Under the pieces are notes generated by a model. That model had not been told where the DNA came from. It searched no databases and saw only the letters and a program-made list of their open reading frames with translations. This document shows, one piece after another, positions 6,275 to 33,355 of a DNA stretch of 33,355 bases; the first letter of the stretch is position 1, and the number at the start of each line of letters is the position of its first letter. Source of the stretch: Geosiphon pyriformis uo1 (lineage: Eukaryota > Fungi > Glomeromycota); assembly GCA_016748015.1 (NCBI GenBank), contig JAAOMT010000588.1, positions 1 to 33,355 on the forward strand, in the 5' to 3' direction. A program made the position numbers and the translations under genes.

Positions 6275-6883
6275 TTAACGTAGAGCTTTTTCCTCGTTTT
6301 TCATTGTTCCTAATCCTTTTTGATAGCACCCTCCAAGATTGTTTTGTGCCATTATATTACCCGCCTCTGCTGCTTTTGAATATAGTTTGAATGCTTTACT
6401 CCCGTTTTTCATTGTTCCTAATCCTTTTTGATAGCACCATCCAAGATTGTTTTGTGCCTTTAAATGTCCCACCTCTGCTGCTTTTGAATAGAGTTCGAAC
6501 GCTTTTCCTCTATTTTGTGAGACACCAATTCCATTGCTGTAACAATCACCTAAAAATAATTGTCCAAAAGAATCCTCTGCATTTGCTGCTTTCTGAAATT
6601 CTAAAAATGCTTTTGTTAAATTAGAGATAGTTCCAATCCTATGTTCTAAAAAAAAGCCGAGCAAAACATAGTCTATCGAATGCTTTAAACTTTTATTTTT
6701 CAAATGATTGAATAAGTTTTCAGGTTTTTTCTGATTGCGTTCAAGATATTTTTTCACCAAGTTAGCAACTTTTGAATATTCATCAGCTGGAAAACTAGCC
6801 AAATTTTCTTTGATAACAATCAATACTCCTTCAAGCCAGTCGAGGGGTGAAGTTGCATTTTCAATTGATGATTTTGAAGACAT
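6275..6883 (-). CDS. Sel1-like repeat protein, 202 aa, probably C-terminally truncated
   Basis: ATG-initiated ORF with a helical N-terminus followed by ~4 SLRs ([33 protein letters not shown]). It stops mid-repeat (NEEKALR*). Confidence 0.8.
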   Translation of the reverse strand: MSSKSSIENATSPLDWLEGVLIVIKENLASFPADEYSKVANLVKKYLERNQKKPENLFNHLKNKSLKHSIDYVLLGFFLEHRIGTISNLTKAFLEFQKAANAEDSFGQLFLGDCYSNGIGVSQNRGKAFELYSKAAEVGHLKAQNNLGWCYQKGLGTMKNGSKAFKLYSKAAEAGNIMAQNNLGGCYQKGLGTMKNEEKALR

Positions 6884-11595: not shown

Positions 11596-13076
11596 ATGGC
11601 ATCTAAACAACTCTTTCTCGCTTTATCTCACGATTTCGAGAACTTAATAATGGAATTTCTCTGACTTAGAATTCTCGTCGGTAAAGCGGCTAATGCTAGA
11701 ACCTTTCATGCTCATACGCAAATTTTAGCAGCGCGATCATTATATTTTGCTAAAGCTCTCTCTAATGATAGTGTTAAGAGAGAAAATAATATTATTATCC
11801 TCGCTAACACTAATATATCAGCCAGAATTTTCGAGGTGATTCTTAGGTAAGTGTATTAGTTTCTTTAAAAGTTTTTAATAGTAATGGTCACTTATTTTAT
11901 TTTTTGGATAGATATATTTATAATGGCGAAATTTCACTTAAAGAACATGGAATACTTACAATCTTGGAATTGCTGATTGCTGCTGACGAGCTTATTTTGA
12001 AAAATCTTATTGACTATCTCGAAGAATATTTAATTGAAAATCATACAAAAGAGCTAGAAGAAAACTTTGCCTCTTTGCATGAAACATCATTTACCCATGA
12101 TTCGTTCAAAAAGCTACAAGAGTTCTGCTCCCAAATAGCTGCTACCAATCCAACTTTAATCTTTAAATCCCAAGATTTCACCTCCCTCAATAAAAGTTTT
12201 CTTTCTTCGATTTTATCACGAGATGATTTTAAGATGGATGAATCAGAAATATGGGAAAAGGTTGTGGAATGGGGAGTTGCTAAATTGGGTAACAATATTA
12301 AGCCAGAAGAAATTGTAAAATGGACAGATGAAAATTTTGACATCTTTAAGGAATCAATCAAAGAGCTTCTACCTTTGATCCGGTTCTTTCATATATCTTC
12401 AGTTGACTTCTATAACAAAGTGAAGCCATTTGGGAGAATTCTACCCGGAACTTTGTATGAAGATCTTTACATATTATCTAGTACCGGGGAGTCATCAAAA
12501 ATTAGGAGACGCTCAGCCATTCCGAAAAATTGCGTCAAAGCTTCTTCAGTTGCATAATATGAGGCAGCTTGATCACTGGATTCAGTGCAAAGATGAAAAT
12601 ACTCCTTTTCAAGACCAATTTGGAAATAGTTTTAATTTGTTACTTCAAGGCAGTCGAGACGGATTCACTCCAGCTGATTTTCATCGATTATGCGATAATA
12701 AAGGAGCAACAATTAGTGTTATTAAAGTGAAAGAAACCGGTCAACTGATTGGCAGGTATAAACCAGAATCTTGGCATTCTCTCATGATTATTTAGATGGA
12801 AAAGGAAGTTTTATATTTTCACTTGGAGATGGCAAACCTAAAAATGCTAAACTTAGCAAATTTATTGGCAGCCATGGACCTTTTGGTGGCTTACGTTATG
12901 GACCTGAATTTGGCTGGTATAATCTTCATACGGAAAGTAATGATTTTCAAAATGCGCCCGGATGCTATTGTGTAAATAATGCAGAATATGAGCATGCTAT
13001 AATGCCTAATTCAGAAAATGGAAAAGTAGACTTCTTTGTCGAAGAGTATGAAGTTTTTCAAATCAGAAAACTTTAA
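11596..13076 (+). pseudogene. BTB/POZ-BACK-TLDc protein pseudogene
   Basis: ATG at 11596 (MASKQLFLALSHDFENL). BTB motifs FHAHTQILAARSLYF and FEVILR|YIYNG, with an intron at 11847-11911. BACK motif ESEIWEKVVEWG; TLDc motifs GSRDGF..FHRLCDNKG and EEYEVFQI. Frameshifts near 11655, 12470, 12525 and 12780 split it across the ORF-track pieces. Confidence 0.9.
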
Positions 13077-15871: not shown

Positions 15872-17377
15872 TTATCTTTTTATAATTTGAAAAACTTCAT
15901 AATCCTCGAAAAAGAAATTCACCTCCTCATTTTCTGATCCAGGCATTATAGTATGCTCATAAGCTGTTGTCTTTTGACAATAGCACCCTGGACTATTTTT
16001 AAAATCATTGCTGGACACACGAAGATCGACACTAAATTGGGGTCCGGTATTTAGCCCACCATAAGGTCCATATCTGCCAACAAATTTGCTAAGTTTAGCA
16101 TCTATAGCATTGCCATCTCCAAGGGAAAAAATAAAACTTCCTTTTCCCTCCAACCAATCATTCCTAGAATGCCACGATTGTGGGTTATAGCCGCCAATTA
16201 TCTGACCAGTTCCTTTCACTTTGATTACACTAACTGTCGCTCCTTTATCATCACATAATCGATGAAAATCGGCTGGAGTGAATCCGTCTCGACTGCCTCG
16301 AAGTAACAATTTAAAATCGTTGCCAAATTGATATTCTAAAGGAGTATTTTCGTCTTTGCCTTGAATCCAATGATCAAGCTGTTTTACATTATGCCATTGA
16401 AGAAGCTTTGAATCAATATTTAATCGAGAACAACGCAATGGCTGAGCGTCTACAGACTCTTGATGACTACCCGGTACGAGATAATGATGTAAAAGATCTT
16501 CATATAAAGTTCCAGGTAAGATTCTCGCAAATGGTTTTACTTTGTGATAAAAGTCAACTGAAGATATATTAAAGAAGCGGATTAAAGGTAGAAGCCTTTC
16601 GATGGATTCCTTAAAGGCGTTAAAGTTTTCATCTGTCCAGTAAAGAACTTTTTTCGTCTGAATATTGCTATCCAATTTAGCAACTCCCCATTCTACAATC
16701 TTTTCCCATATTTCAGATTCTTCTATATTTATTTCATCCTGGGTTAAAATTGAGGAAAGAGCATTTTCACTAAGGGAAGTAAAATCTTGAGAGTTGAAGA
16801 CTATTGCTGGATTGTTAGCAGCTATTTCGGTGCAGAATTTTTGTAACTTTTTGAAAGAATCATGCATAAATGAAGTTTTCTGCAAAATGGCGAAATTTTT
16901 TTCTAGCTCTTTTGCATGATGTTTAATCAAATAGTCTTCAAGGAGATCAATAAGATTCTCTAGAATAAGTTCGTCAGCGGTAACAAGAAATTCTAAAATG
17001 GTAGACACTCCATGTTTATCAAGAGAGATCTCACCGTTATAAATATATCTGTACAGAAAAATAAAATATATGAATTTATATTGGCCAAAATACTTTGAAG
17101 CAAATAAAAACCCTTACCTAAGAATTATTTCAAAAATTTTAGGTGAAAAATTAGGTTTAGTGAAGATAATAGCATTGTTTTCCCTTTCAACTAAATTATT
17201 AGAAAGTACTATGGCAAAATATGGTGATCTTGCTGCTAAAATTTGTGAATGAGCATGAAAAATTTTGATATTGGGGGCCTTTCCAACAACAATCCTAACA
17301 TCAGAGAATTTCTGACTATCTAGTAAATTCCCGAAATCATTGGATAAAACGTGAAAGTGTTGTTGTTGAAGTGACAT
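15872..17377 (-). CDS. BTB/POZ-BACK-TLDc protein, intact, 2 exons (17377-17118, 17048-15872), 478 aa
   Basis: MSLQQQHF...FSDVRIVVG...FHAHSQILAARSPYF...FEIILR|YIYNG. GTAAG..CAG intron at 17117-17049. Exon lengths 260+1177=1437 nt, in frame. BACK and TLDc (RGSRDGF, FHRLCDDKG, IIGGYNP, EDYEVFQI) motifs present. Confidence 0.93.
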
Positions 17378-30329: not shown

Positions 30330-30788
30330 TGTTATAAAATAGTTTTTTACTTATTTTAATTGCTAATATTTTCTTTTAATTATATTTAGTTTTTTATAAG
30401 TTTTTTAATTTATTTATATAAAAAACTTTTTTTTTAATATTATAATATAAATTATTTTTTAATTTTTAATTATTATATATATTTATATACTTTTTTTTAA
30501 ATTTTAAAAGTAAAATTGTTATATAAATTGATGGATCATTTATTGTTTTCTTAATAATAAAGCTATTATATATATATATTTGTAATTTTACAAAAAATAC
30601 ATTGTAAATTTTTTTTAATATTTTAATTTAGTGTTTGCTGTTATTATTAATTAATATTAACTATTATTACAAGTTGATATTTATAATTTTACTAATTAAT
30701 ATTTTTTTAAGATTATTATTATATTTTATTATAATTAAATAATTTATATTATTTTATAATTTTTTTAATAAATTTTTGAATTATAATA
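30330..30788 (-). mobile_element. Solo-LTR-like insert 2 (459 bp), inverted and more decayed relative of insert 3
   Basis: TGTTATAA...TTATAATA with a 4-bp TSD ATAT (30326-30329 and 30789-30792). Removal restores the frame YYIFKLAE. Both ends align to the reverse complement of insert 3. Confidence 0.8.
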
Positions 30789-31225
30789 ATATTTTTAAGC
30801 TTGCTGAATTATTGAGAACTAAAAAATTAAATATTAAATTTTTTATTATTAATAAAAGTTATATAATTAAATATGTTTTAAAGTATTTATTTTTAATTAT
30901 GTAGTTATTAATAATAAATTAATATTAAGTTTTAGTAAATTTAAGTATAAGATTAATATAATTATAAAAAATTGAATAAAAAAAGAGATTAATATTAAAT
31001 AATATTCTTAATTTATAAAGTTATTAGTATAAGTCTTTAATTTATATTGATAATAATATTTTTTCGAGTATTATAAATATTATTTATAATAAAATATTAT
31101 ATATAAATAAAGTTTTACTTAATCAAAAAGCTGTAAGTTTGTTTGATATTACTAATAAATTATAAAACATTATAATAATTTTGTTTTAAAGATGTTTTTA
31201 AATTTGTTAAATTTTTGTTTAGTAT

Positions 31226-32049
31226 TGTTACAGTTCAAGAATTTAATAAGAATTATAAATAATATAAATTAGCCAATTATGAAATAATACAGCAACAATT
31301 TATAAAAAAAAATAATTTATAAATAACAACAAACACTATTTTACAATAGTAATAAGCACTATTGTACAATAACAATAAGTACTATCATGTAAAAACAGCA
31401 AACACTATTTTATAATAGTAGCAAGCACTATTTAGAAATAATAAAAATAAAGTATTACAAGACATTATTTTGTAAAACAATAATTATATATATATATAAT
31501 AGTTTTTAATGATGAAAAAAAAACAGCTTTAACTAAAAGCAACAAATATCTAAATAAAATCTTATTTAAAAATAATAAATTAAATAAACATTACAATTAT
31601 GAAATTAATAATAGAATTTACATACCCTTTCTAGTAAATAAAACTATCATTCTATCTCTAAACCCTTTAGAAGAATAATTTCTGATCAAGATTATTTATG
31701 TAATTATTTATTAAATTGAAAAAACTTTATTATATACTTAGGAAAATTACAAAAAGACCATTAATATTCTGTGTTTTTAGATTAGAGAACACATCAGACA
31801 ATTGCAAAAATAGTCTCAGAGAAGACTCCAGACAGCAGGTAGATTTTAAATTAGTCTCTAGAAAAGAGTACTCAATATACAAAAACAACTAGAATTAAAA
31901 AAAAGACTTATATTACAATATCAAGAGAAAATCTTCAGTATATTATCATTATTATCTAATACATAAAATCAAAGAACTTACAAGAGACTGATTACAATTA
32001 AAATAGAAAATCAACAATTAAAATATACCAAAAAAACACTTTTATAACA
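31226..32049 (+). mobile_element. Solo-LTR-like insert 3 (824 bp)
   Basis: TGTTACAG...TTATAACA with a perfect 4-bp TSD GTAT (31222-31225 and 32050-32053). Removal restores the frame FCLVYKFV. Strand is given only relative to insert 2. Confidence 0.85.
31325..31432. repeat. ~21-bp degenerate tandem repeat (5 copies) inside insert 3
   Basis: AA(A/G)(C/T)ACTAT core recurs about every 21 bp. Confidence 0.7.
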
Positions 32050-32194
32050 GTATATAAGTTTGTTTTTTTAATTTTGAAAAAGAGTTTAAATAGTTATAAT
32101 TTTTATGTTATATAAATAAAAAAAAGTTTTAATTAATATTAAATTTATTGTTTTGATTAAAATTATTTAGAAAAAAAATTATATATATATTTAA

Positions 32195-33115
32195 ATAGAA
32201 ATAAAAAATAGGAAATAGAAAATAGAAAATAAAAAATAAAAAATAAAAAATAAAAAATAAAAAATAGAATTAAAATAAAAATTAAGAATAGAATAGAAAT
32301 AAAAAATAAAAAATAAGATAAATATAAAAATTAGAATATAAATAAAAATAGGAATAAGAATAAAAATAAAAACAGAAATAAAAATAAAAATAAAATAAAA
32401 ATAGAAATAAAAATAAGAATAAAGATAGAAATAAAAATAAAAATTAGAATAAGGATAAAAATAGTAATAAATATAAAGAATAAGTATAATAAGAATAAAA
32501 ATAAGAATAAGAATAAAAATTTAGATAAAAATAACAATAGATATAACAATAGATATAAAAATAGGAATAAAGATAAAAAAGAATAAATATAATAAGAATA
32601 AAAATAAGAATAGTAATAAAAATATAGATAGAGATAGGAATAAAAATAAAAATAATAATAAAAATAAAGAATAAGTATATAAAAATAATATAGGTAAAGA
32701 TAAAAATAAAAATAAAAATAAGAATAAGAATAAAAATAGGGATAGAAATAAAAATAGTAATAAGAAAAAGAATATAGATAAGAATAAAGATAAAGATAGG
32801 AATAAGAATAAGAATAGAAATAAAAATAGGGATAAAACTAAGAATAAAGATAAAGATAAAGATAAAAATAGAAATAAAGATAGAGATTGAGATAAAAATA
32901 AAAATAAGAATAAGAATAGAGATTAGAATAGAGATAAAAATAAAGATAAAGATAGAGATAAGAATAGAAATAAGGATAGAGGATATTTATAGGGATAGGG
33001 ATATTTATAGGGATAGGGATATTTATAGGGATAGGGATAGAGATATTTATAGGGATAGGGATAGAGATAAGGATAGGGATAGGGATAAGGATAGGGATAA
33101 GGATAGGGATAAGGG
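32195..33115 (+). repeat. Degenerate telomere-derived array (ATARRR), with G content rising toward the end
   Basis: 6-bp period is largely retained. ATAAAA/ATAAGA dominate proximally; ATAGAG/ATAAGG/ATAGGG dominate distally. Confidence 0.85.
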
Positions 33116-33355
33116 TTAGGGATAGGGATAGGGTTAGGGATAGGGATAGGGATAGGGTTAGGGATAGGGATAGGGATAGGGATAGGGATAGGGTTAGGGA
33201 TAGGGATAGGGTTAGGGATAGGGATAGGGATAGGGATAGGGATAGGGTTAGGGTTAGGGATAGGGATAGGGATAGGGATAGGGATAGGGATAGGGTTAGG
33301 GTTAGGGTTAGGGTTAGGGATAGGGATAGGGATAGGGATAGGGTTAGGGATAGGG
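33116..33355 (+). repeat. Telomere: mixed ATAGGG/TTAGGG array to the end of the window
   Basis: 40 perfect hexamers, 28 ATAGGG and 12 TTAGGG, with the G-rich strand running 5'->3' toward the end. Confidence 0.95.

What the first reader, a model, noticed from the sequence alone, without database searches (positions are those of the whole stretch)
33116..33355. Non-canonical dual-repeat telomere (A/T)TAGGG with ATAGGG in the majority
Seen: 40 in-phase hexamers, 28 ATAGGG and 12 TTAGGG, in aperiodic order (T AA T AAA T AAAAA T AA T AAAAA TT AAAAAA TTTT AAAA T A) with no other variant. Established: TTAGGG is the common fungal repeat, and single-position mixed telomeres are known in Paramecium and Plasmodium. 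Inference: telomerase itself makes both units, via two telomerase-RNA paralogs, a long template holding both units, or stereotyped misincorporation at one template base. I am not aware of ATAGGG-dominant telomeres being described in this fungal group.
Basis: partly seen in the sequence, partly recalled or inferred. Interest (0 to 1): 0.9.

Follow-up and report, generated by a model that had tools for sequence, protein, structure and literature searches.

The report
Two-layer telomere in Geosiphon fungus
The window ends in a real chromosome-end telomere of the fungus Geosiphon pyriformis, in which an unusual unit (ATAGGG) fills the inner half and the ordinary unit (TTAGGG) the outer half, a layout seen at all 41 assembled chromosome ends.

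Summary
Window 33116-33355 holds 40 in-phase hexamers, 28 ATAGGG and 12 TTAGGG, with no other variant, and it runs to the contig end.

It is not a local oddity or an artefact. The window is a whole contig of a 128 Mb genome whose proteins match Geosiphon pyriformis. 41 contig ends carry the same two units with the G-rich strand pointing outward.

ATAGGG is not the majority genome-wide (917 against 1113 TTAGGG, 45%). The arrays are polar. The ATAGGG share falls from 0.75 in the inner fifth to 0.29 in the outer fifth, and 19 of 41 tips are pure TTAGGG runs of up to 56 units. This window simply stops in the mixed zone.

- **Best reading (about 0.5):** telomerase adds canonical TTAGGG, and an inner ATAGGG/ATATTTATAGGG array is copied between chromosome ends by recombination.
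- **Rival (about 0.33):** telomerase itself writes ATAGGG. Ends seeded on broken retrotransposons start with one TTAGGG and then up to 33 perfect ATAGGG.

No telomerase RNA was identified. Other first readers noted the same mixed telomere on other pieces of this genome (s1-486317, s1-495588, s1-505754).

The parts
33116..33355 (+). Perfect two-unit telomere array of 40 hexamers (28 ATAGGG, 12 TTAGGG), G-rich strand running 5'->3' to the contig end. This is the mixed zone of the layered telomere; no long TTAGGG tip is assembled here.
32951..33115 (+). Imperfect inner zone in the same hexamer register: ATAGGG units mixed with G>A decayed units (ATAAGG, ATAGAG) and four copies of the 12-mer ATATTTATAGGG. 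That 12-mer recurs at most other chromosome ends.
32193..32950 (+). Decayed hexamer tract (consensus AAATAA, about 128 copies, 72% matches, almost free of C). It derives from ATAGGG-type rather than TTAGGG-type units.

Best explanation
The 240 bases are the inner, mixed part of a real chromosome-end telomere of Geosiphon pyriformis. Every assembled end has the same layers from inside to outside. (1) Hexamers decayed by G>A. (2) A mosaic of ATAGGG and the 12-mer ATATTTATAGGG. (3) Long perfect ATAGGG runs. (4) A short mixed zone. (5) Usually a pure TTAGGG run at the tip. I take TTAGGG to be what telomerase adds in steady state (inferred). I take ATAGGG to be a position-1 variant that has been amplified and kept alike at all ends by copying between ends, that is break-induced replication or unequal exchange primed from a short TTAGGG-like seed (inferred). 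Contig C35 either stops before its TTAGGG tip or carries a short one. Shown: the layout, the polarity, the blockiness and duplication inside the arrays. Inferred: which enzyme lays down each layer.
For: Orientation and spread: (ATAGGG)4 occurs 254+308 times, on the minus strand at contig starts and the plus strand at contig ends. Mixed-unit probes give 18+16 and 19+29 hits against 0 for the reversed control. Polarity: over 41 ends the ATAGGG share falls 0.75, 0.53, 0.36, 0.31, 0.29 from the inner to the outer fifth, and 19 tips are TTAGGG runs of 5-56 units against 7 ATAGGG tips. Blockiness: runs tests reach z = -7.7; runs of 15 or more units number 28 (T) and 7 (A) against 11 and 1.2 expected if geometric. 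Non-telomerase dynamics: alternating TTAGGG-ATAGGG stretches of 6 or more units occur 8 times against 0.25 expected. At C346 a 14-mer from the unique flank is repeated three times inside the array. The 12-mer ATATTTATAGGG, which differs from two ATAGGG units by GGG>TTT, is shared by most ends with unrelated flanks. It sits directly after the first unit at C42, C499 and C28, so copying between ends reaches position 2 of the array. An interstitial fossil at C514:111.5 kb keeps the same ATAGGG-then-TTAGGG order. Away from contig ends, TTAGGG dimers occur at about 21 sites (a few on small ~50% GC contigs), while ATAGGG dimers occur only in the C514 fossil and on one small 45% GC contig, C318. TERT is present. 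The relative R. irregularis uses TTAGGG. Humans show the same principle of inner variant repeats and an outer canonical array.
Against: None of the 41 ends is TTAGGG-only. Ends seeded on unrelated unique DNA, two of them retrotransposon sequence (C530 RVT_1, C336 RT_RNaseH), start with one TTAGGG-like unit and then 11 to 33 perfect ATAGGG. Thirteen independent flanks keep exactly one T-type unit, which is tighter than homology-dependent copying would predict. About 11 ends have ATAGGG runs outside long TTAGGG runs, and 7 tips end in ATAGGG. Only one variant is amplified: other units make up 3%. All of this rests on one draft assembly. No reads could be laid.
Confidence: 0.5

Rival explanations
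1. Telomerase itself writes ATAGGG as well as TTAGGG, now or in a recent epoch. One version: a telomerase RNA whose alignment part pairs with TTAGGG and whose copied part encodes ATAGGG gives one T unit on a new primer and then only A units, beside a canonical RNA that makes the outer TTAGGG runs. Other versions: two template alleles in different nuclei of this multinucleate fungus, or heavy position-1 misincorporation.
For: Junction rule: 13 independent flanks read G/T-rich microhomology, exactly one TTAGGG-like unit, then ATAGGG-type units. Flanks that already end in GGG go straight to ATAGGG. Of 80 places where four or more perfect units follow a non-G base, 77 start with ATAGGG; most of these follow an ATATTTATAGGG 12-mer or a decayed unit inside an array, not unique flank. 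Healed breaks in retrotransposon sequence carry 11 and 33 perfect ATAGGG. The ATAGGG runs are free of the G>A decay seen further in, so they are young. There is no TTAGGG-only end. ATAGGG runs and tips lie outside TTAGGG runs. Human telomerase is reported to make position-1 variants, ATAGGG among them (PMC3919612). Two TERT-like loci exist.
Against: A constant-rate mixture would be random and non-polar, as in Paramecium or Plasmodium, whereas these arrays are polar and blocky. The 12-mer ATATTTATAGGG obeys the same junction rule but cannot come from a hexamer template. No internal locus with a CCCTAT-containing 12-mer survived inspection: C656 lies in coding-like sequence and C73 is an odd ~50% GC contig. 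The search was limited to templates of 12 or more bases in some registers.
Confidence: 0.33
2. One-off historic template switch. The lineage used ATAGGG for a long time and reverted to TTAGGG recently, so the inner layer is simply older telomere.
For: The polarity. The decayed inner tract descends from ATAGGG-type units.
Against: The decayed interstitial fossil at C514 already has both layers in the same order, so the layout is old and stable rather than a recent switch. ATAGGG runs lie outside long TTAGGG runs at about 11 ends. The long ATAGGG runs show no decay.
Confidence: 0.1
3. Assembly or base-calling artefact, or an interstitial satellite rather than a telomere.
For: There is only one assembly and no reads were laid. 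Several apparent internal arrays exist.
Against: The same two units appear at 41 ends, always with the G-rich strand outward. ATAGGG has mutated derivatives and a fixed 12-mer derivative, which an artefact would not have. The apparent internal arrays end at runs of N, that is at scaffold joins. A 2020 run of the same organism holds 58% of the sampled words of window 30500-33355, but it may be the source data.
Confidence: 0.03

Closest known systems
Variant-repeat zone of human (vertebrate) telomeres: TTGGGG, TGAGGG and TCAGGG in the inner 1-2 kb, pure TTAGGG outside (PMC3919612 and my own knowledge)
   Same: Single-base variants of TTAGGG are concentrated at the inner end, interspersed and in blocks, with a different map at every end. 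The canonical unit lies outside. Recombination spreads the variants.
   Different: Here one variant (position 1, T>A) plus one 12-mer derivative dominates. It makes up 45% of a telomere only 0.1-0.7 kb long, is present at every end, and appears even on freshly healed breaks.
Telomerase-made mixed telomeres: Paramecium TTGGG(T/G), Plasmodium GGGTT(T/C)A, tomato TT(T/A)AGGG (own knowledge)
   Same: Two units that differ at one position share one array.
   Different: In those organisms the units are, as far as I know, interspersed along the whole array from one ambiguous template position. Here the array is polar and blocky (runs to 33 and 56 units), although this window taken alone looks random.
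Position-1 variants made by human telomerase (GTAGGG, ATAGGG, CTAGGG; PMC3919612)
   Same: The same position and even the same variant. The paper reports the GTAGGG variant clustering in blocks among canonical repeats.
   Different: In human cells they are a small minority and are inferred to lie distally. Here ATAGGG is nearly half of all units and mostly proximal.
Canonical fungal telomere, e.g. Rhizophagus irregularis (TTAGGG)n (PMC10234402)
   Same: Same phylum. TTAGGG sits at the tips, and TERT is present.
   Different: No ATAGGG layer is reported there. I could not check that genome myself.
Template-mutant telomerase RNA experiments in yeasts, ciliates and human cells (own knowledge)
   Same: Two templates give blocks of two perfect units, ordered by time of synthesis.
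   Different: Those are engineered. No second template was found here.

Membership tests
Telomere (terminal telomerase-type repeat array) | Array lies at the physical end of the sequence with the G-rich strand running 5'->3' outward | tested here: met
   Window array ends at the last base of contig C35. All 41 ends have the same orientation.
Telomere (terminal telomerase-type repeat array) | Same repeat at many chromosome ends, rare inside chromosomes | tested here: met
   41 ends carry it. Internal arrays end at scaffold gaps, and one short fossil lies at C514.
Telomere (terminal telomerase-type repeat array) | Genome encodes telomerase reverse transcriptase | tested here: met
   Telomerase_RBD at C608 and C572, TERT_C at C572.
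Telomere (terminal telomerase-type repeat array) | Terminal in the DNA molecule (Bal31 sensitivity, reads ending in the array) | not testable with these tools
Telomerase-made mixed telomere (Paramecium/Plasmodium type) | Both units interspersed along the whole array without polarity | tested here: not met
   ATAGGG share falls from 0.75 to 0.29. Runs tests reach z = -7.7. Only this window's 40 units look random.
Telomerase-made mixed telomere (Paramecium/Plasmodium type) | Telomerase RNA template accounts for both units | tested here: inconclusive
   Rfam found nothing on 15 candidate loci and the whole-genome Rfam search failed. The 12-mer census found canonical-type sites only, plus two A-T-T sites (C371, C646) of unknown nature.
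Telomerase-made mixed telomere (Paramecium/Plasmodium type) | Newly healed ends carry both units | tested here: met
   C336 and C530 abut retrotransposon sequence and carry one T-type unit, then 11 or 33 ATAGGG, then TTAGGG runs. Copying from another end could give the same result.
Proximal variant-repeat zone (human type) | Variants enriched at the inner end, canonical unit at the tip | tested here: met
Proximal variant-repeat zone (human type) | End-specific interspersion maps shaped by slippage or unequal exchange | tested here: met
   Every end has its own map. There are 12-mer higher-order stretches, and the flank marker is triplicated at C346.
Proximal variant-repeat zone (human type) | Variants are old mutated repeats, absent from new telomeres | tested here: not met
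   Perfect ATAGGG runs sit on healed breaks, and no TTAGGG-only end exists.

The most novel reading that the evidence does not exclude
Geosiphon has a telomerase activity that writes ATAGGG onto new or short ends. It could come from a composite template (alignment part TTAGGG-type, copied part ATAGGG-type) or from a second telomerase RNA or allele. A canonical activity then adds the TTAGGG tip. This would be a natural two-template telomere with a built-in inner and outer layer.
Probability: 0.3. Interest if true: 0.85.

Novelty: new variant of a known kind. Interest (0 to 1): 0.58.

Why it matters
Telomere repeats are among the most conserved sequences in eukaryotes. This early-branching symbiotic fungus has short telomeres (about 0.1-0.7 kb) in which nearly half of all units are a single-base variant, laid out in a fixed inner/outer order at every assembled end, including ends healed on broken transposons.

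- If the inner layer is installed by copying between ends, then recombination-based end building works alongside telomerase in a normal organism.
- If telomerase writes the inner layer, this is a natural two-template system.

Either way the double-strand telomere-binding proteins must cope with ATAGGG. One long-read data set plus identification of the telomerase RNA would settle the question. There is also a practical point: telomere finders that look only for TTAGGG will under-call ends in this genome.

Tried and rejected
1. **Whole-genome Rfam search** for fungal telomerase RNA (RF02462): the machine gave no answer.
2. **Rfam on 15 candidate loci:** only chance-level matches.
3. **Template hunt with 12- to 14-mers** whose flanks break the repeat.
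   - The composite CCCTATCCCTAA occurs at only two internal sites. C656 lies in coding-like sequence: on the opposite strand the motif reads Leu-Gly-Ile-Gly inside a hydrophobic stretch (my own reading), and the longest open frame across it has no Pfam match. C73 is a ~50% GC contig with homopolymer runs and no long open frame. I rejected both.
   - C82, C116 and C318 are also small ~45-50% GC contigs, probably not fungal.
   - C638 and C653 are copies of one repeat.
4. **Folding three remaining candidates** (C713, C371, C646): z = +0.4, -0.1, -2.1, which decides nothing.
5. **Apparent TTAGGG runs followed by inner-type arrays** (C646, C681, C549, C44, C731): I first took these for recombination products. 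They are separated by runs of N, that is scaffold joins, so I dropped them as evidence.
6. **Reads.** I sent no piece of those places to any tool afterwards.
7. **Metagenome scan for (ATAGGG)5.** More than 119 contigs came back. Those carrying many TTAGGG units are about 60-70% GC, and in the 16 contigs I coded the arrays also carry CTAGGG, TCAGGG, TGAGGG and TTGGGG. That variant set is the human/vertebrate one, and one record is from a human gut sample. I therefore stopped: I compared nothing further, searched for no more of them, and draw nothing from them.
9. **The Geosiphon genome paper** is not in the held library, so the sequencing technology is unknown to me.
10. **TERT.** The exons were searched one by one by reference. 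The joined protein was not built.

Full report
**What is in the window.** There is no other unit, and the array runs up to the last base.
- Just inside (32951-33115) the same register continues with ATAGGG, G>A decayed units and four copies of the 12-mer ATATTTATAGGG.
- Further in (32193-32950) lies a C-free tract of about 128 decayed hexamers with consensus AAATAA.
- The window is 20% G+C overall, and 10-18% in its last 13 kb.
- A runs test on the 40 units gives 16 runs against 17.8 expected (z = -0.69). Within this array the order is compatible with random.

**Which organism.** The window is the whole of contig C35 of a 128.3 Mb assembly in 792 contigs. Its open frames carry BACK/TLDc and Sel1 domains. 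The best 81 database relatives of one of them are all Geosiphon pyriformis proteins, followed by other Glomeromycota. The organism is therefore G. pyriformis (Glomeromycota, Archaeosporales). In the held library ATAGGG appears only as a minor human variant repeat. R. irregularis telomeres are plain TTAGGG. No held paper discusses Geosiphon telomeres.

**Genome-wide survey.**
- (ATAGGG)4 occurs 562 times, on the minus strand at contig starts and on the plus strand at contig ends. The tool's reversed control is meaningless for that probe, because the reverse of this repeat is a rotation of itself.
- Probes with an asymmetric unit order give 34 and 48 hits against 0 for the control.
- I fetched and tokenised 41 contig ends.
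- All places where four or more perfect units follow a non-G base fall on contigs I examined, so the set is close to complete.
- Arrays that looked internal (C731, C646, C681, C549, C44) stop at runs of N, that is at scaffold joins.

**The layout.** Writing A for ATAGGG, T for TTAGGG and d for ATATTTATAGGG, the terminal arrays hold 917 A, 1113 T, 139 d and 66 other units. ATAGGG is therefore 45% of the two perfect units, not the majority.
- The A share falls 0.75, 0.53, 0.36, 0.31, 0.29 from the inner to the outer fifth.
- 19 tips are T runs of 5-56 units. 7 tips are A runs of 3-29 units. The rest are mixed.
- Most arrays are strongly blocky: runs-test z goes down to -7.7, with far more singletons and far more runs of 15 or more units than a geometric law allows.
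- Alternating T-A stretches of six or more units occur 8 times against 0.25 expected under a first-order chain. This amounts to a 12-base higher-order unit.
- The typical end reads, from inside to outside: decayed hexamers, d/A mosaic, A runs, mixed zone, T run.
- C35 ends in the mixed zone. C36, C37 and C634 have similarly long mixed zones.

**Evidence that arrays are reshaped without telomerase.**
- At C346 a 14-mer from the unique flank is present three times inside the array, each time followed by a similar T-A-T module.
- The d unit differs from two A units by GGG>TTT, so it cannot arise repeatedly and cannot come from a hexamer template. It is nevertheless shared by most ends with unrelated flanks, and at C42, C499 and C28 it sits directly after the first unit. 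Copying between ends therefore reaches position 2 of the array.
- An interstitial fossil at C514:111490-111590 has about 11 A-type units (many decayed), then 7 T-type units, then unique DNA. The A-then-T order is old and stable.

**Evidence that ATAGGG is not just an old fossil.**
- No end is T-only. No run of four T units anywhere follows a non-G base.
- In 13 independent flanks the array begins, after a short G/T-rich stretch, with exactly one T-type unit followed by A or d units. Where the flank already ends in GGG, the first unit is A. C346 (five T) and C581 (two T-type) are the exceptions.
- Two such flanks are retrotransposon sequence: RVT_1 near C530 and RT_RNaseH near C336. This agrees with other readers' notes of telomeres seeded on broken Gypsy copies. 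Their arrays begin with one T-type unit and then 33 or 11 perfect A units.
- About 11 ends have A runs outside T runs of 10 or more units.
- The long A runs are free of the G>A decay that marks the inner zone.

**Weighing the two readings.** Copying between ends is needed in any case, because of the d units and the C346 module. It can also explain the A runs, the polarity, the blocks and the higher-order units. I therefore rank 'TTAGGG-only telomerase plus copying of an inner variant array between ends' first, at about 0.5.

Its weak point is the one-T rule. Homology-dependent copying should leave a variable number of T units, often more than one.

A telomerase RNA whose alignment part pairs with TTAGGG and whose copied part encodes ATAGGG would give exactly one T and then A runs. 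Human telomerase is reported to make position-1 variants, ATAGGG among them. That model needs a second, canonical template for the T runs and does not explain d. I give telomerase-written ATAGGG about 0.33, a single historic template switch about 0.1, and an artefact about 0.03.

**Search for the telomerase parts.**
- Two TERT-like loci exist, C572:~755.7 kb and C608:~679.5 kb. Both have Telomerase_RBD pieces. C572 also has TERT_C and longer open frames, while C608 is more broken.
- For the RNA, a census of unit dimers whose flanks break the repeat found about 21 TTAGGG-dimer sites away from contig ends, a few of them on small ~50% GC contigs.
- ATAGGG dimers away from ends occur only in the C514 fossil and on C318, a small 45% GC contig.
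- Two composite T-A sites were both rejected (C656, C73).
- Two A-T-T sites (C371:390502, C646:651133) are of unknown nature.
- Rfam and folding decided nothing. The telomerase RNA remains unidentified.

**Reads and other collections.**
- One 2020 run of the same organism holds 58% of the sampled words of window 30500-33355. It may be the source data, so it is not independent support.
- A metagenome scan for (ATAGGG)5 returned more than 119 contigs. Those rich in TTAGGG are about 60-70% GC, and the 16 I coded carry the human/vertebrate variant set. I take them as possibly human or vertebrate. I stopped there, compared nothing further, and draw nothing from them.

**Verdict.** It is a real telomere, and a genome-wide property of G. 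pyriformis. How the inner layer is made is open, and one long-read data set plus the telomerase RNA would settle it. I class it as a new variant of a known kind, with interest 0.58.

Noticed in passing
G000 C572:750800-760799 (L064) and C608:674500-684499 (L063): Two TERT-like loci share motifs in the RNA-binding and reverse-transcriptase parts. C572 has longer open frames and a TERT_C match. C608 is more fragmented and lies next to a Vps54-like gene, so it may be a pseudogene, as another reader noted.
   Followed up: partly
G000 C514:111490-111590 (L107): Interstitial fossil telomere: about 11 ATAGGG-type units (many G>A decayed), then about 7 TTAGGG-type units, then unique DNA. It looks like the trace of an old end-to-end fusion or telomere capture.
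   Followed up: partly
G000 C346 end (L046:1230-1680): The 14-mer TTATTGGTTGAGGG from the unique flank recurs three times inside the telomere array, each time followed by a similar TTAGGG-ATAGGG-TTAGGG module. This is a tandem duplication of junction plus telomere.
   Followed up: partly
Contig tips of C42, C334, C778, C565, C634, C391, C771, C775, C578; also C468 and C581: Nine tips end with the same short non-telomeric tail after GG (AGA, once AGATG). Two ATAGGG-tipped contigs end with the same 8-mer, ATATGTAT. The first may be adapter remnants at true molecule ends and the second a shared continuation. Neither is explained.
   Followed up: no
G000 C73, C82, C116, C318 (L085, L089, L090, L106): These small contigs (5-9 kb) have about 45-55% G+C in a genome where the stretches I sampled run from about 10 to 45%. 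C73 has long C and G homopolymer runs and no long open frame. They are probably foreign or low-quality sequence.
   Followed up: partly
About 21 sites away from contig ends, e.g. G000 C718:1273572, C645:216925, C713:16224, C701:1029578, C692:874902: Isolated TTAGGG dimers are several times more frequent than the reversed control, while ATAGGG dimers are essentially absent there. At least one sits just upstream of a TATA-like box. They may be binding sites for a TTAGGG-reading Myb factor.
   Followed up: partly
window 32500-33115 and G000 C9 end (L001): C35 and the 5.6 kb contig C9 have near-identical sequence at the start of the decayed hexamer tract but different unit maps further out. Similar pairs are C36/C391, C334/C634, C384/C732 and C549/C669. 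These are either duplicated chromosome ends or the same end assembled from different nuclei.
   Followed up: partly
window 6275-6883 (-), 11904-12557 (+), 15872-17008 (-): Open frames with Sel1 repeats and BACK/TLDc domains. They belong to gene families that are hugely expanded in Geosiphon and other Glomeromycota, here within 17-27 kb of the chromosome end.
   Followed up: partly
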